A DNA stretch of 64,000 nucleotides from Ophelia neglecta. Lineage: Eukaryota. Below the pieces are notes generated by a model. The model was given only the letters and a program-made list of their open reading frames with translations, was not told the DNA's origin and searched no databases. The translations under genes were made by a program, and so were the position numbers. The DNA is taken from contig OZ260664.1 in the NCBI GenBank assembly GCA_965285935.1, positions 25,420,001-25,484,000 of the forward strand, given 5' to 3'. This document shows positions 3,207 through 59,000 of this stretch, piece by piece (position 1 is the first letter of the stretch; every line of letters begins with the position of its first letter).

Positions 3207-6200
3207 ATGAAATGTGTTTATTTGCAATCATGTTTGCTGCTAGCAGTGTTCGCAGCAAATGGCTTCGTGGCTACTGCAGACAGACCTGCCAAAGAATATA
3301 TCCTCAATCTTGACTTGCCGGAGGAGCAGAGATGGAATCAAATCCTAGATGACCATAAGGGTTTTGTTGTTGAGCTTATCAACGTCTTGGGGTAAGTTGT
3401 TGGGGGAGTGATGTGGGTGGGGAGGGGGGGGGGGGTCGGTGAACGTGGGAGGGGCCTGAAAGGGGGCAACAAGGATAGAGGGTTGGGAGGAGAAATGCCT
3501 GTAGCTTTACCCAGTTACTAGCTGTATAGCTATCATCAACCATGGGGTGTGTCTGCATGTTGGGGTGGGGTGGGGGTGGGGTGGGGGTGGGGGGTTAATA
3601 CCATAAACATAATCCCCATTCCCCGTTCCAAGTTTGAAAAATGAGCAAATCCTGATTAATGAATGTTTAAAGTCTGCAAGTTGTTTCCCGCTTCTCCTTA
3701 AATTAGTGATTCCCTAGTCATGGGAAATTAAACAGAACATTCCCAGTAAATTCAAATCCATAATGCCAAATCACGGACAATTGTCGAATCCCGATTCACA
3801 AGAAATAAAACCTTAAATTCCATGTTCACGAATAATTAAAAACACCGATCCCGATGGTCAGAAATACCCCCTAACCACCCCCCCCCCCATAATACCATGA
3901 ACGTGACTAGCTCCACCTCATCTCCGTGACCCTTCCCCCCTTCCCTCCCAGGATACCCCCTCCCCCCCCCCCAGTGACCCTCCAGCTGTGCTCAACTGGG
4001 TCCATCTGTCATCAATGTTTAGACGCAAGAAGTGCCTTTGAAGTGTCTTTGAAAAGCAACTTAATTCTTGTGATTAAAAAAGACAAAAATAACTTTTTAT
4101 TTGGACCAATGACAGACATTTTTACTGTCTCTTTAAATAATGTAACATTGGGGCTTGTTTCGGAAGTATGTGGGGGGCTTGGACAGGGAAGATAATTTTA
4201 TGTGTTAATTTGTTTTTCAGCAAAATTGTTCCAAAAGAAGTCATTCCTCTTGTCACCAAATTGGCCTCAGGACTAAATAAATATCTTCCTGAGAAATATG
4301 CCAGAGAAATTACAGGTAATGTATGGCAGGCGACCAAAGGGTAAACATAGCGGGGAATGGAGATCCCGGGACAGGAGGGGGGGGGGGGTGGAGGGGGAGG
4401 GGGGGTGATTATTCCATATAGGGCTATTATGGGTATGTAGGGAAGTTTTGAACTCTCCTCCCTTTCGCTGTGAGCTCCATCTTTTAGACCCACAATTTTG
4501 CAAAATAGATGTATTTTGGACCACCTTAGTCTTAAGTCAAACTTTTAGGCTCACCATTTTGCAAATAGGGATCTTTTGGACCTCCTTATTTTAGGAAACT
4601 ATCTAAGAGGGATCTATTGACCCCATATTTCTCATGACGGCAGATCTTTTATTGTCTACATTTCAAACAACAACCTCACAACCATGCCTAATATTGTGCC
4701 TAGTGCCCCCCCCCCTTTGAACTCTTCTGGAATTAACATTATTACTGCATATGATTAAAGTAATTAATTTTTCAAACAATGACTGCATCAGTTAAGCTTT
4801 CTGTTCAATTGTTACTTTTGTCCCTCTATTAAAGTATTTGACAGCTTTTAAGACTATTGAATCATTGTGTTACATGTACCAGTACATGCAAAGTAAAATC
4901 CTTGAAAATGGAAAACTTTATTTCTTAGTTCCATAAACTCCTTTTTTTAATAAAAATTCATGATTTGGTCTGTGTCATGATATGAATATATGTAGACAAA
5001 AGTTTGCTACCTATGGGAGGACCCACTCTGTCACTTGAGCCATTTATATTATGTCAACTTTGCAAAAGTAAAAGTATATATAGCTCAAATGATGAAATGA
5101 GATTCTAATGATTTTTGGCATTGATAGGAATTTTCTTTCAGGTATTGCTAATCATTTGAACCTCACCGTGGGAGATGTGTTACTTCCAAATATCATTTAT
5201 GATGCGAGTGCGTAAGTAGCCATATATACCGAGCAAGCTCGATGAAATGGGAGTTTTCTTAACCCTTTAGGTGCCAAACAAAAATACAAATTTGATGTCT
5301 GTAAAGTGCCAAAAGATTAAGCATATTTTCCAAAGGTTCATGTCTCTGACTAAGAATGCAGAGTTTATGGACAACTAAAGATTTTCGGAACGGGCAGGAC
5401 CTCAGCAATGATATAAAACAAATTGCAGTGAATAAGAGATGATATGGTGTTAGGAGGCTATTTTTTTATACAGAATACTAAGTAAAATATATCTAGATTA
5501 TAGAGGCCCTTGGCACTTTACCTACATTAAAAGAAGGGCCCATTTTGGAGGCCCTTGGCACTCAAAGCGTTAAACAAACAAACATATGGTCATGAAATAT
5601 ATGTTGGCATTTTCAAGCATGCATTTCAGAATAAATAACTTGATTCACTTCAAATTTCAATGCCTTCTTGTAGTGGATTTCATTGTACTCTCTCACTTTT
5701 GTACATAGATTTTGCACCAGTATCATTTCTACAGACTCCCGTGGACAAATTTGGCATTCGAGAAATCTAGACTACCGATTTACAGAGACGTTGAAAAATT
5801 TAACTATTGTTTATCATGCGCAAAGGAACGGAAAGGTAAAATAGTATTCCTTAGCATTGTACATGTTGTACAGTTGATATTTATAATGACTACTTCAACA
5901 TGTAACCATAATTTATAATTCAGTCGAAGTATTTTTGCTTACCGGTATTTAATGTTCAGCCATATTGAAAAATCTAACTGTGTCATGTGATCAAATACTT
6001 TTTGGTAACAGCAAAGTGGGACTAAACTATCCAAACTATTTGAAATATCTCATGTGTGTTGATTCTACTGGCTGCTTTTTAAACTAGTCTACTATTTGCA
6101 CGTGATAAAATCAAGCTTTTTTGGTTACCTGCATGATAGACTTCTGTGCTGGTAACACACCTTGGTAGGCCTATTTGACTACCTTTATATTTCTAGAATC

Positions 6201-9200
6201 AATGCAACACATAGTTTAATACTTGATATTTGTTTTACACATGCACACTGTAGGTGTCCAGGGAATTGTTCTAACCAAATGTTTGCTACTTGAACATTCT
6301 TGCATCAGTAATCAAGTGGTAATAGTATTCAGGGGCAGATTAAGATAAATAAGGATGAGAGCTTTCTTATACAGGAGATAAAATTGCATTACAAAGGAAA
6401 TAAATATTAGCAGCCAGCCAAATGCAAGGGTGATGAAGTTATGCAGGTTTTGAAGCTCATGTCAGACAACTAGACCAAGTCTAGTTACAAATTGGCCAGT
6501 CTAGTAAACTTCAAGGTGAACTAGTCCCATGACAAGTGGGAGGGATAGGCCAAAACTCCTCAAAACACATATCTCAGTCTATTAAAGGAAAAGTTAGCTT
6601 TGAAGCCTGGTAATCTTAGCCAAGGAACAATTGTTTGATATAATAAAATATTGGAATTCCAGCACTGTCACCATTAATTGTCTCTAATAATGAAAGACCT
6701 CCAATCCTTTTTTTACCTTATTCTGCGCCTGTATGTATGTACTTTTAAATTGTATTTTACTAGTACAGTGTTACCTGTGAATTGAGACCACCCAAGTGGT
6801 CTGATTATAGAGTTGGTATACAGGTAAGTGTATAGTATGAAACTCTTATGAATGGTCTGAATTTACAGGTGGTCTAATGACTGAGGTGGTCTTAAAAGCA
6901 GGTTTCACTGTATATAAAATATTTGTTCCCAACAGACACAATATATGCCTGCCCATATGCATAACCAATTGAACATGCCAAACACTAATTTCAATCTCTA
7001 TATTGAGACCTTATCTTAAATTCACCCTCAATATTATCCTCAAGTTCCACCCTAGTTATATATATACAAATAAGATTAAAATGATAATAGCCAACTGGGT
7101 TGCAGCCCTTGGAAAGAAATAGCCCAGAGGCAAATCTTTATTGCTCAGAAAAATTGGCATTTTTACTATGTGGTGCTTCATTATATTGTTCTGCTGTAAT
7201 TGCTAATGCTGAAAGTGTGTCAAGGACGCAATTAATATTTGACAGTTTCTCTTGAAATCCTGCCTGGCAAAAAGCGCTCGCCACCTGTGCTTATGTTTCT
7301 ATGACACCCTTAGTCCAGTTCAAGAATCATTAGCTATTGGGGAAAACGCTTGGCCAAGGTTCATCACTGATATAAGGCTTGTTCCTCAACAGCTTTCTAG
7401 TAAGGTTGTTGAAAGAACATACTAGCAAAACTTTGGCATCTTTCTAAAATTGTACATATTTTGGACACTAAATTTGTACTTTTCCATATCCAGACCCTTT
7501 TCACAGCATCAACGTTTGTTGGTTACATTGGAACAGTGACCGGTCAAAAGCCGAAGGTGTTTACGATCACTTCTGATACCAGAGGTGATTATTGATTTAA
7601 TATTTGTTGCATACCAGTATGATTTTTATCAAGTGTTTTATTGTCCAACTTCCAGACTGTTTATTCAGCAACCTCTTATTTGGGCTATGTTGGAATCCTT
7701 ACTGGCCAGAAACCACACATTTTCACTGTTACAGTTGATCAACGAGGTACAGAATAGATTTAAGTTAATAATTTTGTAATGGATGCAATGCTCTTGTTTG
7801 TTGCCCTGATTTTGCACACACCCCCCCCCCCACCCTCCCCCTATCCCCTTAGCTGTCATATTGTTTTAGAATATTCAACATTTAGAGTATGTATCTTTTG
7901 ACCTGAAGTACATTTACCAGGTAATTATGTTTGTTGTGCATTCACAAATAACTTTGCATGACATATGGTCAGTCAAGTTACTGATGTGATTTGAAAGATT
8001 AAACTTTAAGGTGTGTCCCCTAAGATTAGACAAACAGTTAAATTAGCGACAAATTAAAAAAATCTTTTGGGTGTCTAACATCTGAATTTAAGAAGAGTAT
8101 CCAATCTGGATGTTGGTAACTTAAGCAGATTTAAACAATTTCAGTCAATTAAATTTCCTGACCTCAAGCCAAGCTGCTGGAAAGTCTGTAATTGCAATAT
8201 GCAGTTTTGATTTTCTCATTACAGTTATATTTATGGAATTTGACATGCATTGCCTTTGTTATTTATCAAAGTAATTTCTTTTTTTTCTAGATAAAGGTGC
8301 TGCCTGGATGAATATGGTGATGGCTTTGTTTGATAGAAAAGCTAAGTTAGTTAGCTTTTTGGAGAGAGATGTAAGTATTTGTTGCAATAAATGTTTTTGA
8401 TAGTGCCATACATACTGTTATGAAGATAACTGATGACACTGATTAATTTAGAAACACACATAAGACAATCCTACTTCATGAAACATGATCATGTTAATGA
8501 TAGGACATGTATATGTAACCCCAAATATTAAACTCAAATATATTCTATACCATACTAAACTTGAAATCATTTCAAAATGTGATTTGATTAGCCCTAGTGG
8601 GCTTGTGGTGGCAGGGGAAGGTGGGGTAAGATGCACACCCTAAGGAACATGCACAAATTTCGGTATGGTTACTGTCCCCAATAATAATATTTGGGATTTT
8701 TCTTGTAAGAATATTATCTACCGCAACAGATATCTCAAAGCTATAACACTGAATGGCTTAACCTTATTTTAATCACCCTCTGAATGTTAAGTTAAAAAGT
8801 GTACCCCTGTTAACCGAAAAAAATTGTTGTCCCCGGACGAGTTCGGTTAATTGAGTCTATGCTGTATATTTGGCCTTATGTTTCAGACTTTGGAGGTGGC
8901 TGATAGCTTTGCTGAGGCAGTGCAAATGCTCAGTGAGTCTGACACAATTGCTCCCGTTTACTTCATTGTTGGAGGAGTCAATCCCAATGAAGGAGCTGTT
9001 ATCACCAAGTCCAGGTTAGGCTCCCGCGATGTCTGGTTTCTGGATTCATCAAAGGGAAGGTAAGATATCTCCCTTGAAACCAAATACACACGACATTAAG
9101 TAAGCAAGAACAGAAATATTTACCCCTTTGTGAGAGGACTTTTTTTTCCCAACCTTTTAGATGTAACGTTCACAGTGTGATAAAAGATTGCTTGTTGTTC

Positions 9201-12200
9201 AAACTACGAGCAGCTACTGATCTGAAAACCAGTCTATATTGTTGCTGATCTATTGTTTGATAAAAGGCCATTATTGGCTGCTTGCAAGGGGTAAGATGAG
9301 AACATAAAATGTAGAGTAATTTTACTCTTCTGATGTCTGTATGCCATGAATAAGTAGGTCAACTTAAATATGACTTTGAAAGTGTCTTGAAGCATCTGGT
9401 TATTGTGTGTTGGTTGGCCTCCTAACCTTGTCAGATAGCCATACTTAGCACCAGTGAGATGATGATATACAAGTAACCTAGATGTTTGTGAGCTCGATAT
9501 TGGCTTTGATCTCTTTGTAATATCAGTCCACACACCCTAGAGGTGGTTTTATAGTATGTGATGTCTGTATGTAATCATAAGCTCCCTTCAAATTACCTAG
9601 ACATGAAATAATCCCGGGCAAAAGGAAAAATAAAGTTAGCTGAGGGCTTAACTCTTTCACCACCAAATGTTATCGCAGCTACACACCTACTATGTATGCC
9701 AATATATTTCCTTTAGTTTTATAAAACTAGGTTTTGTCAACATGGTACTAAGTTACTGATTGGTTTTGCTATTAAACTTCAAACCTTCCGTATATGTAAT
9801 GTGTTTAGCTATCTATGGAATATTCTAGCATTTGCCATAGTAACTGCTTGTACTTAGAATGATGTCATAAATAGCAAGGTAGCACATTGTCAACAAAAAT
9901 TCGACAATGTTGACTGTTTGCTGACAAAAGTCAGATTGTCAGTGAGAGAGTTAAGATAATTATTGATGGGAATATATTTTAACAGTAAAAGAAAATATTT
10001 GTTATGTATTATTGTATTAACAATAACTAACAATAACTGTGTACTTTTTACAGTGAATAAATAAATTAAATAAAAAAAAACCAAAAAAAAAACATTCTAA
10101 TATAAACATAGTCATTTCAATTCCAACACCAACAATTTCATTAAAACTATTAAAGAAATAATCATCCCTTATTTCCAGGTGGTACCTTGTGGAAACAAAC
10201 TATGACCATTGGCTATCCCCCCCAACATCTGATGATCGAAGGTACTGAGCATTTTACAAAATAGTCAGTTAAACCTTGATTAATGACATGCATTTAAAGC
10301 CTCCCAAGAGAGCCACCCATTGACCTATCATGCATGTTTCGCTCTTATCGAGATTCCCAGTTGAATTTTTTTTTAGATCATGATATATCAAAAGTTTTGC
10401 CTCATTTTCATGTTCCATGTACTGTACCTACTGCTAACAGAGAAAACAGTGCCTTAGAACCTAATTTATTTGATTTTTATTTAATGACAGATTTCTCTTC
10501 AGTGAGCAACATTGTAGACACTTGCAGGGTATAAGTTGTCCAAACTAAGTAAGTGATGGATATCACATTTTTTGGACCACACAGCCTTTATCCAGTATAT
10601 ATATATATATTTATCACCAGTGTGATGATGTTTTTGTTCTTTTTGGGAATATTGAACTCAAACTACTTTTATTTAAATCTGTTAAGATTACCAAAGTTAT
10701 GCTTTGTTTGAATCTATCACAAAGTAACATTTGGTCGGCATCTCTAATAAGGCGATCATCCTTTGATTTCTTGTTTTATGACCTCGTTGATATGCAGCAT
10801 ATTGGCTTTATAAACATAACTTGTCTTAAGTCAGTTAATAACAATGGGTTTTGGGCATGCTCTTGTCTTGCTCTTTAGTTTGATAATAAAACCTGTGCAA
10901 AACCCTTTTTTATCTACTGACTTTAGTCCCAAATCTTTGAGAACTCCACCCCTGCGGTGTTTCAGGATACCTGAAGGAATTATTTATGTTTGACCATAAA
11001 TCTTTGCTGGTGGCTTGGTTAGAAATAATGATTTACCCTTGGAAGTCAACATCGATGTGTTAAAATGTCAGCAGATATTGGTGTTGTTTTACATCTGTAT
11101 TCAGTGACGACATACCTGTAATGAATGATATTTGCCTTTGATTGTTTCCTTAATTGAAATGCCAAATGTACACCAATTAATGGTGTTAACAAACTGCGGC
11201 TCAATGCATGTCCATCGTTAATGTAATAATCTAATATGTAATGTAATGATGGCCCATTGTCTCAATTACATTCAATTAGTACACAACAAAGAAAAAGTTT
11301 TGTTGTATACTACTGATTGAACACTGAAGTATAATTAAAATGGTACAAAATAATCACAAATGGACAAGAAGAAAGTGACAGATGGGGGAGATAGAAGCTG
11401 CCCACAGCTTATGCTCTGACTACAGTAACAATAAATCATCATTTTTTTGGTACAAATAGTGTAAACACAGTGAACTTATATGATTACCCAAAAAGTAATA
11501 CACAAATTATATAGTTACAACCAAACTACATGAGATCAATTAAAATGGCATCAGGCATCCAGTAGCATCTGTTTTAACATTTTTAAAAAGAAGACAGTGA
11601 GTTATTATAATCCAGGATATAGAATTATAAGCTCATACACCCTGGTTACGTAACGTGTGTGACATTTACAACAATCAGAGGGGGTAGATATATGCCATAG
11701 GGGCATTATAAACTTCCTTCCTGTTATATTGTTAATTTCCAACTGCAGCAATTACCTTTTTACCTGTAACTGTGTATATATTGTCCACAACCCCCGCAGT
11801 CAGTTTCAAACCATAAGGGTGGAGTTAATAACTCTGGAACTATCTATGATCATCATTAATCAGTATTACAAAGCTATGAATACATATGGACAAAAACAAA
11901 AGTAGGTTTACCTGTTTTGTTGCTGATATTTATACTCATTTGTTTATTATTACTGTCATTTTTGAAATATTAATGAAACATAGTGTTGGGTTCATATTTT
12001 TATGATTAGCTCACTTGACACCTAATTAAAGGTAATAATTACGATATGTGTAATCAGGGTATAAGTACCTGACACATGATCTGTGAGAATCTTAGATCAA
12101 TACCTGTATTGCAATGATGAATGACGGCCCTACAACATTTTTTGCTTAGTCACATTTTAGTGGAATAAATCTGAGGAGAAAAGATATCATTGTGGGAAAC

Positions 12201-12682
12201 AAGTAAGAGACACAGTATGTACCATAATTATTTAAGAGTTAGTATTCATTTATTTAGAGAATCTTATTTTATATTTAGGGACCCTGCTATCAAAATGATG
12301 AATGCTACTGGCCAGGTTGGCATTAACAAAGCCAGCCTGTTCAAGATTATGTCTACACCACCTGTTCTCAATGCGTAAGAACCTTTCTGCATAATTGAAA
12401 TGGTAGACAGAGAAAAAAGGGAGACCAGCGTGAGACATCGCTGTTGGGTCAAGAAACCTTTCTCTATATATGTATATGAGTTTTGAACATAGAAGCTTAA
12501 TATTAATCTTACTGTTTTAGATTTAAATTCCTTGTAATTCCTGTCTTATAAAAAATGTACATGTTGTTAAGCTGATTGATGAAATGTTTCTCATCAACAG
12601 GAAAACCACTTACACCGTGATCATGAGTGCTGCACAGCCGGAGGTGTACCAAACCACTGTCAGGACTGGCAAGCACAACTGA
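3207..12682 (+). CDS. NAAA: N-acylethanolamine-hydrolyzing acid amidase (NAAA)-like Ntn cysteine hydrolase, about 353 aa, 10 exons per transcript with two alternative exon-5 copies
   Basis: All GT-AG and phase-consistent: 3207-3391, 4221-4315, 5142-5211, 5709-5835, [7494-7584 or 7656-7746], 8291-8370, 8887-9059, 10179-10241, 12279-12374, 12601-12682. Has a hydrophobic signal peptide, LNLDLPEEQRW, autocleavage/catalytic site F-CTSIISTD, SRNLDY, YFIVGG..EGAVIT, WYLVETNYDHW..DDRR and PVLN..TYTVIMSA, matching NAAA/acid ceramidase motifs. Confidence 0.93.
5263..5569. mobile_element. piggyBac-type MITE in NAAA intron 3
   Basis: TTAA|CCCTTTAGGTGCCAA ... TTGGCACTCAAAGCG|TTAA: TTAA TSDs at 5259-5262 and 5570-5573 and short CCCTTT-type TIRs. 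Confidence 0.7.
6766..6910. mobile_element. Tc1/mariner (pogo/Tigger-like) MITE
   Basis: TA|CAGTGTTACCTG ... CAGGTTTCACTG|TA, with internal GGTGGTCT repeats. Confidence 0.65.
7494..7584 (+). CDS. NAAA: NAAA exon 5a (alternative), TLFTASTFVGYIGTVTGQKPKVFTITSDTR
   Basis: Acceptor ...ccatatccag, donor GTGATT. 91 nt, phase 0 to phase 1, open reading frame. Confidence 0.85.
7656..7746 (+). CDS. NAAA: NAAA exon 5b (alternative), TVYSATSYLGYVGILTGQKPHIFTVTVDQR
   Basis: Acceptor ...caacttccag, donor GTACAG. 91 nt, phase 0 to phase 1, open reading frame; 15/30 aa identical to exon 5a. Confidence 0.85.
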
Positions 12683-17243: not shown

Positions 17244-20200
17244 TTAAATAGATTCTGAGGCAGTTTGTTCAAGTTCTTTCATTATGGTAGATATCATATC
17301 TCCATAATGATGGCCAAATACAGCCCCATTGTGTGATATGATCCTCATGAATTTTCCACACATCCTGCTCAGGTCTTCAGACACTGCTGAAAATCCCGCT
17401 GGCACCTGCATTTTATCTGGTTTAGCACTGGATATAAGTGTGAAAACAAACTCCAAAAGTCGTTTATCTGTGGAGGATAAATAATGTATTGAATTATAAT
17501 TTCATTTTCAATAAACAAATAACAAAATGACAATAATGCACATGAAGCAAAAACCGAACTGCCTGAAAAATTATACCAATTACGTACGTAGAAACATTTC
17601 AATTTGAGTATGAAAATGAAAACTTACGCATTAATTTTCTCACTGGATGATCATCAGAAGCAAGGGCTTGGAGCTGGCCTTTTAACAATTCTTGTTGAGA
17701 TTCAGAAAATTCAGGGAAGCCATGATCAGCCATACACTGTATGATATCTTTGTTAATCTGCTCACTGACATTGACCATGGCTGCGTCAAGCTGGCTGCAA
17801 TCAAAACAGAAGGTCATAACTGTAATGGTCTACTGTCACATAGTGTCAAATTGTCCATGGCAGATAAACAATGCTTAGATCTTATTCCCTGTTGTATTAA
17901 GTGGGCCCGAGTTCCATGTTTCCAGTGTCAAAAGAAGACAGTTCTGTTACCAGTTTACCTCTATCTCTCATGGATACTGTTTCAGAGAGAGTAAACTATC
18001 TACCTACTGGTTCTTTAAACACTTTTAAGTTTGCCCTATATTAGTTTCAAACGGGGATATGACATTCAAATATATCCAGACCATAGTTGTGCCCTGCTAA
18101 ATCAACTGTGAGTGTAAGAAGTTAGTGTGGATTTAATGAATTTTAAATAGAGGTTGCTTGAAAGAAATGTGATGGTTATTTGTCTAGCAGGAGACCAACA
18201 ATATACTGGACCACTCTTGGCTGTAAAAATTATTATTGAATAACAGTGAGAAGACGTTCAGAAGCTCTGCTAATTTGATATGAGAAAGGCATACTCCCAC
18301 AAAGCAGTTTCATATATAAAATTTACCCTTTAAGTATGTCCGCTAATATCACAGCAATATGGTCTTTGAAGTTCTCTTTTAGGCCAGCGATTCCAGCTAT
18401 CGGGCCACCGACCGTGCTGTATGTCACTAGTAGTATAGATGCCACCAGACTCAGCCATCTCGTTCTATCTTGTAACTCCATACATCTTCCTTGATCCATA
18501 ACCAAACTCTGTAATTTCAGTTATCATAAAATAAAGTTATGTGTAATGTGTAAGCTGGGCATATTTAAGTTTTCATTGCATATATTTGTAGCAGTAGATG
18601 CAGTCAAAATATATAATACTGTGTGAAATTAAATTTACTTGTAAAAAAAAATGACAATATATTATCGGACATGTACCTTTAAAATCTTAAATGAAATGGA
18701 GGCTCCGGTTGTAAATGAATCACCACAATATATTTTCTTCCCAAAATTCAATAAATTGGAACTTGATTTCAAATATAAGTGAACAATGCAAGTGAAATTG
18801 GCAATGTTAACAAAAATTCCATGGCCATAAAATATCAACATTTTTGGTACTCCAAACATCTAGTATGGCAATAGGCATGTTTTTTGCTAGTACATACTTC
18901 AGGGTAGATGATGTTGCTATCCCACTGGAGCAGTTCCAGGTAGGCCGTGTTAAGAACAGCGGCCGGGGTAACTGGAGAGGTTGACGCAGGTTCTGAAGAC
19001 ATCCCAGCCAGGACAGCCTGGTCTGCTGCTTGGGACTGGGCTTTCTGGTACAGCTTCTCTGCATTCCGTCTTAACCAAGATCTTGTGAATTCTAGGCCAT
19101 CAACATTATTATCTAAAAGAAACAATCAGATTCTACATACACTTGAACTGCACAAGTTTTTCCTTTTGAATTGGCGAGCGGGGAAGATGTGGGGGTTGAG
19201 AGTGCCTGCTGGAACTTATTTTATTTTTTGCTATTCTATACTGGAAGCCCTACTCTAATATGCTAAGCTTGTGTTAAAGAGGTATATAGCATGTATGTAA
19301 GTTGGGTTATGATGACTGCTATATTTGCATCCAAAGTTCATTTTTAACTTTTGAATAAAGAAAAGCTGACCTTGTTGTTGTTTCAGGAAATCATTGAACT
19401 TCTTTCTTTCATATTCTACAGACTGTTGTTGAATGTATGGCTTCATTTGTTGAAGGGTAAAATTTGCCATATCAAACTTCATAAGATCAAGTATGGCATA
19501 TATTTCTCTGAAAAATTCAAATTGTGTTTTTAAATTGATTAAATTTTGAGGTTTCATGCTGGAAAATAATAATGTAAAATGGCTGACAAGGTTTTGAGGA
19601 TTAACAACTGGTTAAACACACAACACATTGTGTTAAATACATCTGTACGGCGACACATGTACAGCTTCCACTGACTATTCATTGGGGCCTACATGTACAT
19701 GTAAGTGGGGACAAAAGTTATTTTTTGAGCACACATTAAAGCAATAACTATAGAAGTGCTCTCTTCCAAATTAAAGTTGTTTTATACATGTGACATCTTT
19801 TTGTTAATTTTCTATTATAATCTAAACAATTTTATTTTCTTCCCTAAGTCCAATGACAGGGGGTCATCATAATATATAATTAAATGCAGATGATGGCCTA
19901 CATACTAGTATATTGGATATACCCTAAAATATAAAAATGCAATAATACATTTTGCACCACAAGCACTAAGAATGCAGTCTGAAATTATGTTTATTTACTG
20001 GGGATATTTCGTATGGTCAATCCATATTATGTTTGTCATACAATGTTACCAATACCCATTTTTAGCACAAAGTGAAATTTCTATAGTTTGCTATAAAAAA
20101 ACTGAGAATAACTACTATCTAAAACCGTTACATTAATCATAAATTCTGCTGTTAATGGTGTTTGATATTAAAGCTTACTGATATAAAGGGACAATTTCCT

Positions 20201-21663
20201 TAATTTCCTTGAGCTTGGCGACCTGCTCATCTCTGGCCGGAGCACATAATTTCGACATAACAGAGATAACAAAAGCAGCATAATTGTGAAAGTCAAGAGT
20301 TCCATGATCAGCTTGTTGTTTAATCAGTTCAATGTCCAATCCTTCTGCAATATGTGCCTTAAAGTTCTTCTGGTGGGGCAGTAAGAGGGCCAATAGGTTC
20401 TGAAAAGACAGGAAGATGTACCTGTAACTTTCATGATCCACCTGTGATTCAAATCTTATACTGAATATTCCTAATACGATGTGAAAACTCACCTCTCGCA
20501 CTTCTTCTAATAGAACCATGGCATGTGACAAGTCTGGAGGATCCTCATTCAGTTTTTCCTGCAGTGCATCCCAAAAAGCCTTTTGCATAATTTCCTTAAT
20601 TTGTTTTTCAATACTGAAAAAGCAATTACTTGCTATTTATATGAAGTCAACCATGTTATAGAATAAATCCCTTGACAGGTGGTTAATTCTTAATCAAAAT
20701 ATAAATCCAAGTGTTAATGGTTTTAATTACAGGTTTATGATGAAAGAAATTTGCAACACCTCTATCTAAATGTTATCTATAAACTTCTATAAACTCGTTT
20801 TGGTGCAGTCATTATGCCTGTTATAAGATCATTTTCTCCATCAAAATTCCAGAACATTTATACTGGGCATTACACAAATGACTGTCTGAGGCAAAAAGCA
20901 ATGGAATTTGAGCAAGTGAATTTAAGATTTATTTGCATTGTGTCGTATTTCAGTACAACCAAGATATTATGTTTTTGGCAAGCACTTTTTAAAGTTTTGT
21001 CAATCCCTGATGTAATAATAAGTTTAACCTACACTACTGGTTCCTCTTTCTGTAGTTTGAAGTTATCTTCAACAACAATTTCATGTGCAAGCTTCATATT
21101 AGAAACTCCACTTGCTGCTTTCATAATTTCCTCAAATGAGACAAATTTTGGTGGTGATGCTAAAACAGAAATAAAATATATTCAGTAATTAGTTCATTAA
21201 TATTTGATATTTTAGGGGAATGAATTCCTGCAAAAAATTCTTACAAAAAAAGACTATGCACTTATTAGCAACCAGATGGTTATATATCAAAGGTGATCAA
21301 TATTCTTAGAATAAGTGCAAAGATTTGGGTAATTTCTTGTGTTTTCAAAAAGGGTAGAATACAAATATTGCAGAACAAAAAAAAAGACTGATCAAATGGA
21401 TGCCACAATACACACTAATATCACCAGAATTGCATATTTACAGTTACCGGTACTTTTCAATTTTTTTTCAAGTAAGAAAAACTCTAACCTGCCACTAGAA
21501 ATGAATTAGGATTTTGATTCCCATTTCTTGGAGAGGCTGCTGGGCTGTCCTGTGGTGTTGTTTCATTTCTTGCTCTTTTATCTCTTGGGGACTCATTGGG
21601 TGAATCTCTGCCAGTGTCTTTGTCATAATTTCCTGACTTGTTTTTATCTTCCCCAGATGCCAT
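17244..21663 (-). CDS. TCP11L1: T-complex protein 11-like (TCP11/TCP11L1/L2 family), about 522 aa, 9 coding exons
   Basis: Minus-strand exons 21663-21489, 21159-21033, 20613-20493, 20399-20179, 19507-19371, 19112-18898, 18508-18327, 17794-17628, 17467-17244, all phase-consistent. Motifs SPPKFVSFEEIM..NMKLAHEIVV, MQKAFWDAL, LCAPARDE, MKFDMANF..YERKKF and HNGAVFGHHY match the Tcp11 domain. Confidence 0.92.
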
Positions 21664-47141: not shown

Positions 47142-49378
47142 ATGTACGAATATACAAAGCCCCGAGGCCCAATCGCGGCCATGTACAGTAGCCCGGGGCC
47201 GTGCTATGGGCTGCCCGGACTAGTGGGCCATAACACCCATGACCCCCGCAGTGTTCACACGAAGAACCCCGCCTGGCTGTTTGGTATAAAGCACGGAAAG
47301 TTTAGCATGGACTCTAGTCCCGGGCCTGTTCACTACCCAGACGTACAGTACACCCGGAGCGGAAAAAATGGTGCCCCTCACTACTCCTTGTATGGACGAC
47401 AGAGGGACATCAAGGGCTTCGCCCCACCAGGCCCGGGTGCCTATAGCCCCGAGGCCGTTGGGCCAAGCGCCTACCCTCACGCCGCCCAGTACAGCTTTGG
47501 CTCCCGAACCAGAACACGCTCTTCAGACGCTAACCCAGGTATGTTATTAGACAGTCAGATATGTTAAATAAACCGCCCGAATGCTCCATCTAAAATCAAT
47601 AAAATGGATGGTCAGAGCAGGAGTTGGTTGGTGTATGATAGCCAAATAACCTGCAACGTTAAGCCAAATTGTCGATTTTTATAGCTCACAAGGCATATTC
47701 GAATAATTATGAACATTTTAATATCAGCCCCCAACGTGTACTCAATGCCGTCGATGCTGGGACCGACTGTGGTATCTAACAAACCGCAGGCACCTATCTA
47801 TTCCCAAAGGGGCAGAAGTAATGTAGGAAGCTTCCATGAGGATCTCCAACATGTGAGTATCTACAGGAGTCTGCGCTTTAAATACAAAAATATACGTTTC
47901 ATTTATCATATAGTGATCATAGTGTACAGAGAATAAAAAAACATTGAGCGTTGATGCTGTCCGTATATATGCTAGGCCATGCGTGTCTAAAATGGCCACG
48001 TCTCAATTATAAAGGGACCCTGCATTGAAAAATAACCCCCTTTAAATGGCGTACTCGTTTTTTTCAGACTCCCGGCCCCGGTGCTTACTCCTCCATCGAC
48101 CCAAACAGCTACAAACTTCAGAATCCCATTTACAGCTTGCGTAGCCGAAATCCCATGCCGGGAGACACCACTATGAAACCAGGCCCAGGGGCACACTCAC
48201 CTGAAAGGGTACGCTGCCTATCAAAATATGTTACTTATATAAACTGCAGTATTACAAGCTTTTACAGATTTAATATACGTACACTGCATAATGTTTTTAC
48301 TGGATGCATAGAAGATACAACTGAATTATTCATTTTTATCATAGCTATAGTGTATATATATTTATTCAAATTTTGTCAAATGAATTCAGTACACGTGTAT
48401 ACCGATTGACGTAATATTCATTAACTGGAAAAGAAATCTATCGCCAGAGAAAAGAGGTTTAACATAATGAGTACATCAGAAATATATTTTAATAGTTAAA
48501 TGACCGGCCAAATCCTTGGCTATGAGACCGACACATAAACACAACTTGTGTTTAAGCTGGAAAGTTAAAAATAGTAAACTTAACTATATAGTGCAATATT
48601 GCATTGCATGAACATAGTCTTGACCGGTTCGATTCGTGGGAAACCACCGGAAATTACAATCTTGTAAAATTCTAAACCTCAACTTTGCCACTGACTAAAG
48701 TAGTATACTCCTATCGACAAATTAGAAATAGGGTTATTCCTTTATTTGGTAGTAAAAATATATTTATTTACTTTCTCTTCATACTGCAATGATGTGGAGG
48801 TACGAGAACCACGCCATAGTCATATGAAATCTGCTCTTCTCAGTACTTTAAATAACATTGGCGAGAGTGACTTCTAAATGGATATTTAAAAAAATTACAT
48901 TGCAACTAAATTAAACTATAATAAAACATTCAAGGACAAAATAATACGGATTGGTCGGAGTATTATTTAAAATTAATTGCATGTTGAAATACTAGCAATA
49001 ATCGTTAAAAATGATGACCATTCTAATTTAGTATTGGATGTATATCCATGTTGTAGGTTTCGGGCAGTTTATAATTTAAACTTAAGTAGTTATCAGATGA
49101 ATTAAACGCCTGTATTCCGTATTCTTATCATCAGATCTAACTATTAACATATCTAATTACTATTGTTGTTATCTTTTACAGAACTTTGAAGTTTTTTGGG
49201 TTATCAGTTTTTTGGAGTGTTCATTATATTCGCCTATACACTATGGCGAAAACTAATCGTGAGACTTTTCTTATGTGTATTTCAGGTTTACGTGAACAAG
49301 AGATCGGCCCCTAATTTTTCTTTCGGTATCCGACACACAGACTATTCTTGTCCTCTCATCGTAGACGTCGAAGATTAA
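47142..49378 (+). CDS. ODF3: Outer dense fiber protein 3-like (ODF3/CIMAP1, SHIPPO PGP-repeat ciliary/flagellar protein), 251 aa
   Basis: Exons 47142-47538, 47728-47852, 48068-48208, 49286-49378 (intron phases 1,0,0). N-terminus KPRGPIAAMYSSPGPCY, about six PGP-x-Y repeats, C-terminus APNFSFGIRH. Acceptor at 47117 implies a non-coding first exon; candidate donor at 43855/43856 is CAG|GTAAGC. Confidence 0.92.
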
Positions 49379-56044: not shown

Positions 56045-59000
56045 ATGCCCCCTGTCACGTATGCAAGTCCTGGTCCAGCGTATGCCCTCCCGGGCCTAAC
56101 GGGTCGCGAGAAACACGACCCGCGCAGCCAGCACCCAGTGGCCCCGTCCTACAGCATTGGGGCCCGTCGTTCGAGGCCTAAAGACAAAGAATCAGGCCCG
56201 GGGCCTAAGTACAACCCCGATCTGAAGACCTACCATGACGGCCGAACTGTTACAATAAAGGGGAGGCCAACTGATTTCCACAGATCCCTTGATAACCTAC
56301 CAGGCCCAGGGGCTTATTCCCCAGAGAGGCTCGGACCGTCTGCCGAGCAGACGGCTCCTGCTTACACGTTTGGTTCGCGCGCTAAGCACAATAATATTAT
56401 TGTTAGTCCAGGCCCTGGGGCGTATTCGCCTGAACACTCCGGACCCAACGGCACAAAAGTAGCTCCTGCTTGGAGCCTTGGCATTCGGCATATCGAACGG
56501 CAAACAGAGGAGCTTCCCGGTCCGTCGGACTACTCACCCCGAGACGGAAGTAACAGGCACGGGTTTTCGACCGGCCCTTCATTCTCTCTTTCCGGACGGC
56601 ACCAAGTTTACGAGGAAGATGGTTCCCCGGGTCCTGGCGCTTACCACCACGGGGGCACCGACTCCGGGTATCATCCCAGCTGGAGCTTCGGAGGCAGGCA
56701 CACTGAAAGGGGGAAAGATGCTAGCCCGGGCCCGGGGGCTTACAGCGTAAAACTTTCCCCCGACGGTCCATCGTTTAGTATGGCGCAAAGACACTCTAAA
56801 GAGGAGCACGATCGAACTCCAGGTCCTGCTGACTACTCGCCCGACAGAAATATGTTTAGATCAGGACGGAAAGAGGGGCCAAAAGTCACAATTAAAGGGA
56901 GAACAAGAGACCTATCTAAGGATGAGTCGCCAGGACCAGGAGCCTATTCTATCGACTCTCTAGGGCCAACAGCCAAGCAGGGTGCACCCGCCTACAGCTT
57001 TGGAACGCGGTCGAACAAACGAGCGCCTGAAAGAATGCCGGGTCCGGGTCAATATTCTCCTGAAACATCCGGCCCGAGTGCTTCCAAGAGTTCACCAGCT
57101 TTCAGCCTGCGAGGGAGAGACGAGAAACCACGATCATCTGATGACTTACCGGGTCCCTCGGACTACTACCCTATGAGTGGTTTGACTTACCGGGGCGGAG
57201 GACGCGGCCCTAGGTACTCCCTAGGCGACAGACACAGTAGCTCGGGGAAAGATGACTCCCCGGGACCCGGAGCTTACTCCGCCTCGCAAGCAGCTCAAGC
57301 CACCAAAAAAAGAACGCCAGCCTGGAGCTTTGGAGGAAGGAACTCTTCAAATGGCTTTATGGAGAGTTCGCCAGGCCCCGGTGCGTATTTGCCAAGTATT
57401 TCGATGAAAAAAGGCCCTGCGTTCAGCATTGGTTCTCGGCCCAGGGGTCATGAGGATGACCCCCTCCCGGGCCCGGGTCAGTACGCTGTGTCCAATAAAG
57501 GCCGAGAGAATGGACCTTCGTACTCGTTCGGTGGGCGACCGTATGCGACGGGACCACAGGCCTATACGCCAGGCCCCGCGGCCTACTTGCCTCGAGAAGA
57601 CTGGGCTGGACCCGCCCCTAGCCTGGGTGGGAGACTGGGAGAAAAACCGGTAAAAACCGATACACCAGGCAAGTAACGTTATAGACTTATAGCGTAAGAA
57701 ACAGAAAATGAATTGTATACAAGTATACATAACCACTAATGTTATTAGCTTATATACATAGGCCTTCATTCTTATGATTTGTTCGAAGATATTATCTATT
57801 GCTTAAGCAGCAGGTACATGTGTAGCGGCACTTTTAGACGGCACTATATTTGAAGTACAGAATGACGTAGAATTTGGCCAAAACTATAATGTTCCGTCGT
57901 TCCTCGGCCACGGGGTCATATCCGTTGGTGTATGTATGCCCATGAACGGGGAAAATGATTGTTTATGATTTCCTCAATGACACGTACTATTTGCTGATAC
58001 ACGCACATAATTTGTGTAATTTCGGGTCTTTCTTTTAGGTCCAAACGCATATTTAGTGAACCATTCAGCCATCACAAAAGACAAGGCTCCCAGCTACTCC
58101 TTCGGCGGGAGATTGAAGGTTGTTAATGATTACAATGAAGTGAGTATAAACTTGTACTACTGTGATACCCGTTGATACTCGTCAAAGCCATTTGATTAAA
58201 TGTTAGGAACAAAATGTAATGATCACTGAGTATACATGAAGTGGAAGAGAGTTTGTCCTAATGTTTCTGTTGCTTACGTTCAAGCAATAGTTTGTTTCTG
58301 GGTTTTTTTTCCATTCGGCTTACGCAATGTGCAATGAATGGCAAGATGTTTTTAAAGGTCTGGAATTTTCGGAAGAATTAAATGAGCAGCGCCCTTTACA
58401 TAGCTGAGAGCTCGGGGTAGGCTCTTTTTTCCATCACATAAATAGCAAGCAGGTTTGAAACATTTTTTCTGGTTTACTAACCAGATTACTCGTGTTTTTG
58501 TGTGTGTGAAGTATATCTTATGTCCCCATTACAGGCCTATTCGGTGTAAAAGTTTAACAGACTGGTAGACCTGCTAGACTGGCAAATACAAGTATTTACT
58601 AGACTCTTTCTGTACAACAGTCCTGCATAAGTTTCAAATCATCTGGATTTAATAGCTTTTAACGATACCAATGACCCCCCGCCCAAATAAAAAACAACTA
58701 CACTCGGAAGGCTGGATGTTTGTATTCGCAAAAAAGGGCATAGAACAATCCGAAGGAAATCGATATTCGATTCATGCTACTGAAGTATGTCAAATTTAAA
58801 TGCATTCACTGTGATATCAAGCGTAGAGCCCCCGAGGCCGGCCAAGCATCGTGTAGTGAAGCTCGTACAACAGTATGTTTGTATGGAATATATAAAATAA
58901 CCCTGTATGGCAGAACATGTATGGGCATGTATACTATGAGGTTTTCAACTGAGTCCGGTTCCCTAATAATTGTTCCGGACTGGGGAACTGAGCACAAAGG

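What the first reader, a model, noticed from the sequence alone, without database searches (positions are those of the whole stretch)
7494..7746. Tandem-duplicated, mutually exclusive active-site exons in NAAA: one gene, two predicted enzymes
Seen: two 91-nt exons 71 nt apart, each with a good acceptor and donor and the same phases (0 to 1). They are 15/30 aa identical, and most differences are conservative despite heavy codon divergence, which suggests both are under selection. Including both gives a premature TGA at 7736-7738, and skipping both gives TGA at 8309-8311, so only one-or-the-other yields protein. Known (recalled): this exon equals human NAAA residues 167-196, containing pocket residues F174/Y177/W181 and E195. 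The copies differ at these positions: 174 F/Y, 180 T/I, 181 V/L, 195 T/Q. Inference: splicing switches the acyl-chain preference or other catalytic properties of a lipid-amide hydrolase. I know of no mutually exclusive exon pair described for NAAA/ASAH1.
Basis: partly seen in the sequence, partly recalled or inferred. Interest (0 to 1): 0.9.

Follow-up and report, generated by a model that had tools for sequence, protein, structure and literature searches.

The report
Twin either-or exons in NAAA
The only NAAA (lipid-amide hydrolase) gene of this invertebrate has two old, intact copies of the 91-base exon that builds part of the substrate channel; only one copy can be used per mRNA, so the gene probably makes two enzyme versions, but no RNA data exist to prove it.

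Summary
Exons at 7494-7584 (A) and 7656-7746 (B) are both 91 nt. They have the same phases and AG/GT borders, lie 71 nt apart and share 15/30 residues. Including both gives TGA at 7736; skipping both gives TGA at 8309.

Both exons align to NAAA beta-subunit residues 42-71 (human 167-196). The rest of the gene is an intact 10-exon NAAA with C126, R142, D145, N287 and R300 in place.

Divergence looks coding: third codon positions are saturated (9/30 identical) but second positions are kept (25/30). pN is 0.29 against pS 0.83 (p=6e-6). Flanking intron similarity is gone. Simulated neutral drift of A almost never keeps the frame plus the eight family-conserved residues (about 2e-3 at d=0.30, <=2.5e-4 at d>=0.46).

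B is the canonical-looking copy. A is atypical at five positions, and its donor sits in an 11-bp hairpin.

A and B differ at channel residues 175 (V/L) and 181 (V/L) and at cavity residue 195 (T/Q).

Limits: no RNA run exists, no close relative was found, and six distant species have a single exon. Either-or use is therefore inferred, and a difference in enzyme activity is speculation.

This is a new member of a known kind. The scan has already noted many such exon pairs in this genome.

The parts
3207..12682 (+). Complete NAAA-like coding region. It has 10 exon positions and encodes 353 aa with either exon 5: e1 3207-3391, e2 4221-4315, e3 5142-5211, e4 5709-5835, e5A/e5B, e6 8291-8370, e7 8887-9059, e8 10179-10241, e9 12279-12374, e10 12601-12682.
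   Evidence: Frames and AG/GT borders were read. Exon 1 matches PF15508 NAAA-beta. PDB NAAA chains are the best matches for exons 4, 5, 7 and 8.
5709..5835 (+). Exon 4, the constitutive upstream exon. It carries the nucleophile Cys (FCTSII) plus R142, D145 and Y146, and ends in phase 0.
   Evidence: Its Cys aligns to residue 1 of every NAAA beta chain in the PDB.
7494..7584 (+). Exon 5A, the divergent copy. It has V175, T180, V181, S193 and T195.
   Evidence: It keeps all eight family-conserved columns and has no stop. Neutral drift is rejected.
7565..7590 (+). An 11-bp RNA hairpin (7565-7575 paired with 7580-7590, 4-nt loop). It encloses the whole 5' splice site of exon 5A, positions -5 to +6.
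   Evidence: dG is -14.6 kcal/mol, z is -3.9, and 0 of 200 shuffles fold as well. It is kept in the 361-nt fold. It falls in the top 1.2% of 46-nt windows of the gene, and it is the only one of 10 donors with all of -3..+6 paired.
7585..7655 (+). The 71-nt intron between the twin exons. The other introns of the gene are 226-2037 nt.
   Evidence: Candidate branch points (UUUAU) lie at -28 and -16 from the acceptor, which is about 44 or 56 nt from the exon 5A donor (read).
7656..7746 (+). Exon 5B, the canonical-looking copy. It has L175, I180, L181, V193 and Q195.
   Evidence: It shares up to 23/30 residues with homologues from other phyla.
7736..7738 (+). TGA reached when exons 5A and 5B are both included.
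   Evidence: Read; the codon register runs from 7658.
8291..8370 (+). Exon 6, the constitutive downstream exon. Its first two bases complete the codon started by the last G of exon 5A or 5B.
8309..8311 (+). TGA reached when both exon 5 copies are skipped.
   Evidence: Read; the codon register runs from 8291.

Best explanation
An old tandem duplication of exon 5 in this animal's single NAAA gene produced a pair of either-or exons. Each mRNA that encodes a full enzyme carries exactly one of them. Because 91 is not divisible by 3, including both or neither shifts the frame into an early stop, and such mRNAs would give no enzyme and would probably be degraded. The 71-nt intron between the copies may also be too short for them to be spliced to each other. 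Exon 5B looks like the exon 5 of other animals and is probably the default. Exon 5A has a weaker-looking donor buried in a stable hairpin and is probably the regulated alternative. The exon encodes the beta-strand region that supplies two side chains of the acyl channel (human I175 and W181) and the oxyanion-hole residue 195. At all three positions exon 5A has the smaller residue (V, V, T against L, L, Q). The two isoforms would therefore have the same catalytic machinery but a differently shaped lipid channel and head-group cavity. Shown: the anatomy, the frame logic, and coding constraint on both copies. Inferred: either-or use, 5B as default, the role of the hairpin, and any difference in substrate preference.
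For: The anatomy and frame logic were read directly. Both exons match NAAA beta-subunit residues 42-71 with E about 1e-5. Identity by codon position between A and B is 17/25/9 of 30. pS is 0.83 and pN 0.29, Fisher p=6e-6; A is no further from outgroups at nonsynonymous sites than B is (A-L008 pN 0.24, B-L008 0.26). In simulated neutral drift of A, an open frame with all eight conserved columns kept occurred in about 2e-3 of runs at d=0.30 and in <=2.5e-4 at d>=0.46 substitutions per site. The intron flanks of A and B keep no similarity, while the exons score about 4 sd above shuffles. The rest of the gene is intact with C126, R142, D145, N287 and R300, and it is the only NAAA gene found in the genome. 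Both twin exons have off-consensus donors (gtgatt, gtacag), whereas most other donors of the gene are gtaag/gtaat. The hairpin lies over the exon 5A donor. The channel and oxyanion roles of residues 175, 181 and 195 come from PMC8279155 and PMC7730713, and NAAA efficiency depends steeply on acyl-chain length (PMC8279155). Steric hindrance at under 50 nt and frame incompatibility are recognised ways of enforcing either-or splicing (PMC5740500).
Against: There is no RNA evidence at all: the only public runs that hold this locus behave as DNA. No close relative could be found, so conservation of the pair across species is untested. Six distant species have one exon 5. Exon 5A has residues that are rare or absent in 200 family members (S172, T180, V181, S193, T195), which could mean relaxed constraint. 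A recently silenced exon would still look constrained. The hairpin is a single-species prediction; the chance that one of 10 donors falls in the top 1.2% is about 11%. One candidate branch point lies about 56 nt from the exon 5A donor, so steric exclusion is not certain.
Confidence: 0.62

Rival explanations
1. Only exon 5B is used. Exon 5A is a relic: it was once an alternative coding exon but is now silent, or is included too rarely to matter.
For: A is the atypical copy, with T180 and S193 never seen and S172 and T195 seen in about 1% of 200 homologues. Its donor is off-consensus and buried in a -14.6 kcal/mol hairpin. There is no RNA evidence. Six other species manage with one exon.
Against: The frame, both splice sites and all eight family-conserved columns are intact, while synonymous sites and intron flanks are saturated. 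A's nonsynonymous distance to outgroups equals B's. Any silencing would therefore have to be recent.
Confidence: 0.22
2. Exon 5A works mainly as a poison exon. Its inclusion together with 5B, or the skipping of both, shifts the frame and sends the mRNA to decay, which tunes NAAA dosage rather than making a second enzyme.
For: Both-in and both-out transcripts carry early stops. Joined-inclusion reads are common in human clusters with incompatible frames (PMC5740500).
Against: A poison exon needs no conserved protein sequence, yet A keeps second codon positions (25/30) and every family-conserved residue. The 71-nt intron disfavours joining A to B.
Confidence: 0.08
3. Both isoforms are made but are functionally equivalent, so the pair persists without any difference in substrate preference.
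For: Most differences are conservative (11 of 15 positive in BLOSUM62). V/L changes at 175 and 181 lie within the family's natural range. E195 acts through its backbone (PMC7730713).
Against: Long retention of two copies under purifying selection is hard to explain without some difference in function or regulation. NAAA is very sensitive to channel geometry, with 5- to 148-fold changes for one to three carbons (PMC8279155).
Confidence: 0.25

Closest known systems
Mammalian NAAA (PDB 6DXW-6DY2), a lysosomal Ntn cysteine amidase
   Same: It has the same domain order (PF15508 alpha part, then the Cys-led beta part) and the same catalytic set C126/R142/D145/N287/R300. The exon boundaries fall at residues 167 and 196. 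NAAA chains are the best PDB matches for most exons.
   Different: No duplicated exon 5 is recorded for it in the papers and catalogues I could search. Sequence identity is only about 45-50%. Here W181 is L or V and E195 is Q or T.
ACSL6 fatty-acid Gate-domain exons (Y-Gate/F-Gate), PMC1543647 and PMC2868784
   Same: It is a lipid-metabolising enzyme in which two mutually exclusive exons encode alternative versions of the segment that shapes the fatty-acyl binding site. Those isoforms are reported to differ in activity.
   Different: The enzyme family and chemistry are unrelated (acyl-CoA synthetase). The ACSL6 isoforms are proven by cDNA and assays; here nothing is proven at the RNA or protein level.
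Tandem-duplicated mutually exclusive exons in general (human atlas PMC5740500; PMC9741552; alpha-tropomyosin exons 2/3 recalled from memory for steric exclusion)
   Same: The copies have equal length and equal phase, and the length is not divisible by 3. The intervening intron is short, and the copies are homologous but diverged and under selection.
   Different: The pair is restricted to one lineage so far, with no conservation or expression data. The hairpin over one donor is an added, untested feature.
NAAA gene duplicates in other invertebrates (several NAAA-like genes in Ptychodera, Glandiceps, Mercenaria, Sinanodonta, Gigantopelta)
   Same: They are another route to more than one NAAA enzyme per genome.
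   Different: Those are whole-gene paralogues. Here a single gene would diversify only the 30 residues at the channel.

Membership tests
NAAA / acid ceramidase family (Ntn cysteine amidases, choloylglycine hydrolase clan) | An N-terminal nucleophile Cys at the start of the beta subunit | tested here: met
   FCTSII in exon 4. The Cys aligns to residue 1 of all NAAA beta chains, and the Pfam CBAH profile starts at it (weak at 14.6 bits on the exon alone).
NAAA / acid ceramidase family (Ntn cysteine amidases, choloylglycine hydrolase clan) | The other catalytic and oxyanion residues (human R142, D145, N287, R300) | tested here: met
   R, D and Y are at beta positions 17, 20 and 21. N is at beta 162 and R at beta 175.
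NAAA / acid ceramidase family (Ntn cysteine amidases, choloylglycine hydrolase clan) | The alpha-subunit domain PF15508 | tested here: met
   Exon 1 scores 29.9 bits against a cut-off of 27.
NAAA rather than acid ceramidase (ASAH1) | Closer in sequence to NAAA than to ASAH1, with a separate ASAH1 gene in the genome | tested here: met
   For exons 4, 7 and 8 and for exon 5A, NAAA chains beat ceramidase chains by 1-4 orders of magnitude in E-value. Exon 5B is a tie. A distinct ASAH1-type gene lies at C7:53.07 Mb.
NAAA rather than acid ceramidase (ASAH1) | Hydrolysis of N-acylethanolamines at acid pH after autoproteolytic activation | not testable with these tools
   This needs expression and an enzyme assay.
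Mutually exclusive exons from tandem exon duplication | Adjacent homologous exons of the same length and phase with usable splice sites | tested here: met
Mutually exclusive exons from tandem exon duplication | Joint inclusion or joint skipping is non-productive, or is mechanically prevented | tested here: met
   The TGA codons at 7736 and 8309 show it at the sequence level. The 71-nt intron makes steric exclusion possible but not certain.
Mutually exclusive exons from tandem exon duplication | Both copies maintained by selection as coding sequence | tested here: met
   Codon-position pattern, pN well below pS, and the drift simulation. This rests on one species only.
Mutually exclusive exons from tandem exon duplication | Transcripts contain one or the other exon, never both | not testable with these tools
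   No RNA run is on record for this organism. The runs I laid are DNA contigs.
Mutually exclusive exons from tandem exon duplication | The pair is conserved in related species | tested here: inconclusive
   No close relative is available. Mytilus, Owenia, Lingula, Liolophura, Glandiceps and the organism of Logan contig L008 each have one exon 5, but all are at about 50-60% protein identity.

The most novel reading that the evidence does not exclude
A single-copy NAAA gene makes two lysosomal lipid amidases whose acyl channel and head-group cavity differ (V175/V181/T195 against L175/L181/Q195). The choice between them is gated by an RNA hairpin that masks the donor of the alternative exon. Splicing would then retune which bioactive lipid amides are degraded, in place of the whole-gene duplications seen in other phyla.
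Probability: 0.25. Interest if true: 0.6.

Novelty: new member of a known kind. Interest (0 to 1): 0.45.

Why it matters
NAAA ends signalling by palmitoylethanolamide-type lipids, and its efficiency depends very steeply on acyl-chain length, which is set by a narrow channel. A natural pair of interchangeable channel exons would be a ready-made experiment on what sets that selectivity. I found no report of such a splice switch in the NAAA/acid ceramidase family in the literature I could search. It also adds to a pattern in this genome, where many genes carry twin exons at ligand or substrate sites. The value is limited because the pair is known from one species and is unverified at the RNA level.

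Tried and rejected
RNA evidence: the look-up of sequencing runs returned only three DNA-like runs from one sample. Laying them confirmed the DNA but gave no splice junctions.

Close relatives: the representative search with exon 7, two full-length searches seeded with the Saccoglossus and a bivalve-like homologue, an exon-7 fragment search and two metagenome scans found nothing above about 52% overall identity (60% on single exons).

An alignment of one full-length homologue plus the window's exons as separate rows was misaligned by MAFFT and I dropped it.

Annotated same-length isoforms X1/X2 of Ptychodera NAAA differ by one residue only and are not an exon swap.

P0157 proved to be an intronless gene of some other eukaryote. 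P0002 had no DNA available, L007 was too short, and P0218 was not on record.

The whole-genome scan with Pfam CBAH found nothing, because the exons are too short for the profile.

The inverted-repeat search for docking or selector pairs in the introns gave only short matches that could be chance. The 361-nt fold as a whole is not unusual (z = -1.0).

Rfam and tRNA scans of the window were blank.

An apparent low dS between exon 5B and L008 (0.79) is not a sign of recent common origin: the other exons of the same two genes are saturated at third positions.

Everything was done exon by exon by reference.

Full report
OBSERVATION. The window is G000:C7:25420001-25484000 of a 762-Mb animal genome. 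Earlier notes of this scan call it a lophotrochozoan, probably an annelid; I did not test that.

On the + strand lies a complete NAAA-like gene. I set its exon borders by reading frames and AG/GT sites:
- e1 3207-3391
- e2 4221-4315
- e3 5142-5211
- e4 5709-5835
- e5A 7494-7584 and e5B 7656-7746
- e6 8291-8370
- e7 8887-9059
- e8 10179-10241
- e9 12279-12374
- e10 12601-12682

With either exon 5 the reading frame is 353 codons.

The two exon 5 copies are both 91 nt. Each follows a pyrimidine tract ending in CAG and ends in GAG|GT. Each starts in phase 0 and ends with one extra base. They are 71 nt apart and share 15 of 30 residues. With both included the frame meets TGA at 7736-7738. With both skipped it meets TGA at 8309-8311 (read).

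The whole genome holds only these two copies of the exon, and no third copy hides in the flanking introns. Contigs from three public DNA runs (one sample) cross 6886-8500 with both exons and with no variant in either. The runs may be the sample that was assembled, so this is not independent support. With 15 variants in 1.6 kb, the lack of exonic variants is only weak evidence of constraint (my estimate p about 0.07).

WHAT THE GENE IS. Exon 1 matches PF15508, the NAAA alpha part. The Cys of FCTSII in exon 4 aligns to residue 1 of every NAAA beta chain in the PDB, with R142, D145 and Y146 following. Exon 8 supplies N287 and R300. Exons 4, 7, 8 and 5A match NAAA chains better than acid ceramidase chains; exon 5B ties.

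A separate acid-ceramidase-type gene lies at C7:53.07 Mb and has no twin exon. No second NAAA gene was found, with the caveat that the genome search scores only the best candidates.

ARE BOTH COPIES MAINTAINED? At the DNA level A and B are 52/91 identical. By codon position the identities are 17, 25 and 9 of 30. Third positions are at the random level while second positions are largely kept.

By Nei-Gojobori counting, pS is 0.83 (too saturated to correct) and pN is 0.29, with Fisher p=6e-6. A is no further from outgroup exons at nonsynonymous sites than B is: pN 0.24 against 0.26 to the L008 exon, and 0.28 against 0.24 to Mytilus.

The 71 nt upstream and downstream of the two exons keep no similarity (scores at the shuffled mean), whereas the exons stand about 4 sd above it.

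I simulated neutral drift of A from a B-like or L008-like start. An open frame with all eight family-conserved columns (G176, G179, T182, G183, P186, T190, D194, R196) survived in about 2e-3 of runs at d=0.30 and in <=2.5e-4 of runs at 0.46 substitutions per site or more. The observed third-position identity implies well over 1.

So A has been a protein-coding exon under purifying selection for most of its history. Recent silencing cannot be excluded.

WHICH COPY IS WHICH. I compared both copies with the matching 30 residues of 200 distinct family members. B looks canonical, sharing up to 23/30. A never exceeds 19/30. A carries T180 and S193, which are never seen in the family, S172 and T195 (about 1% each), and V181 (4%).

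Both twin exons have off-consensus donors (gtgatt and gtacag), while most of the gene's other donors are gtaag or gtaat.

The donor of A lies inside an 11-bp hairpin, 7565-7575 paired with 7580-7590. Its dG is -14.6 kcal/mol and z is -3.9, and none of 200 shuffles fold as well. It survives in a 361-nt fold. It is in the top 1.2% of all 46-nt windows of the gene, and it is the only one of ten donors with every position from -3 to +6 paired. The codons of the two family-atypical residues S193 (TCT, all three bases) and T195 (ACC, its last base) form part of the stem.

This is a single-species prediction and may be chance (roughly 1 in 10 for any donor, 1 in 40 for one of the twin exons). It suggests that A is the masked, regulated choice and B the default.

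HOW EXCLUSIVITY WOULD WORK. Frame incompatibility is certain at the sequence level. Degradation of the frame-shifted mRNAs is inferred from general knowledge.

The 71-nt intron is far shorter than the gene's other introns (226-2037 nt). Candidate branch points (UUUAU) sit 28 and 16 nt from the acceptor, about 44 and 56 nt from the exon 5A donor. The human atlas of such exons uses under 50 nt as the criterion for steric interference (PMC5740500). Steric exclusion is therefore possible but not established, and the minimum intron size of this species is unknown.

WHAT THE SWAP WOULD CHANGE. In a rat NAAA model built on the rabbit crystal structure, the palmitoyl channel is lined in the beta subunit by Tyr151, Leu157, Leu160, Val180 and Trp186. 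The oxyanion hole is the backbone NH of Glu200 plus Asn292, and the Glu200 side chain lines the head-group cavity (PMC8279155). Subtracting 5 gives the human numbers I175, W181 and E195 (PMC7730713 agrees for E195, N287 and W181).

These are the three residues within this exon that those papers assign a channel or cavity role, and all three differ between the copies: 175 V/L, 181 V/L, 195 T/Q. A has the smaller side chain each time. NAAA efficiency falls 5- to 148-fold when the chain is one to three carbons shorter than the optimum (PMC8279155). A different chain preference is therefore plausible, but it is pure inference.

I did not model the isoforms, because joined spliced sequences were not to be searched or folded. 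All searches were done exon by exon by reference.

RELATIVES. No close relative could be reached. The best full-length homologues are about 50% identical, mostly molluscs. The exon-fragment search and two metagenome scans were blank or distant.

I examined the genomic loci of six other species:
- Mytilus coruscus
- Owenia fusiformis
- Lingula anatina
- Liolophura sinensis
- Glandiceps talaboti
- the organism of Logan contig L008

All have the same exon boundaries but a single exon 5. So the duplication arose within the window's own lineage, and its age can only be called old. Several other invertebrates instead carry multiple whole NAAA genes.

PRIOR KNOWLEDGE. No paper in the searchable library pairs NAAA with mutually exclusive exons. 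The supplements of two human catalogues hold neither NAAA nor ASAH1. The nearest functional precedent is ACSL6, where either-or exons encode alternative fatty-acid gate motifs with different activity (PMC1543647, PMC2868784).

The scan has already recorded more than twenty twin-exon findings in this same genome. They include pairs at ligand or substrate sites of CASTOR, ADAM17 and an mGluR. This is one more case of a frequent pattern here, and like those followed up so far it lacks RNA data.

VERDICT. The reading of it as a mutually exclusive exon pair is well supported by sequence evolution and frame logic, but it is unproven at the RNA level (confidence about 0.6). The claim of two enzymes with different specificity is a reasonable hypothesis only. 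It is a new member of a known kind, of moderate interest.

Noticed in passing
window 6764-6957: A high-copy repeat sits in intron 4. Summed contig depth reaches about 2e5 against about 40 around it, with many contig joints and loose ends. It is probably a small transposon-type element.
   Followed up: no
window 56045-57676 (+) and 47142-47567 (+): An intronless 543-aa open frame made of SHIPPO / sperm-tail PG-rich repeats (Pfam E 4e-56) lies in the only GC-rich stretch of the window (GC 0.54). A second, shorter SHIPPO-repeat frame lies 9 kb upstream.
   Followed up: partly
window 20175-20588 (-): An exon of a TCP11 (T-complex protein 11) family gene lies on the minus strand (Pfam E 1e-29).
   Followed up: no
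G000:C7:53068000-53072500 (loci L010, L012, L013): This is the genome's acid ceramidase (ASAH1-type) gene. Its exon structure around the homologous segment differs from NAAA, and it has no duplicated exon.
   Followed up: partly
window 7656-7745 compared with L008:594-683 and L006:5677-5766: Third codon positions of exon 5B match the single exon 5 of the L008 organism (17/30) and of Lingula (16/30). That is well above the roughly 32% seen in exons 4, 6 and 7 of the same genes. Exon 5A shows no such excess. It could be chance, shared codon bias, or a nucleotide-level constraint on the canonical exon.
   Followed up: partly
L003:3001-4056: An intronless NAAA-like gene (P0157, 351 aa) lies on a 1.39-Mb contig of an ENA assembly. 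It presumably comes from an intron-poor eukaryote, and its exon-5-equivalent segment is 23/30 identical to exon 5B.
   Followed up: no
L008:1167-1469: In the organism of Logan contig L008 (run SRR11715812), exons 6 and 7 of NAAA are fused into one open frame, so that intron has been lost.
   Followed up: no
window 12301-12346: A stable predicted hairpin (-17.4 kcal/mol in a 46-nt window) lies inside coding exon 9. It is among the strongest local folds in the gene.
   Followed up: no
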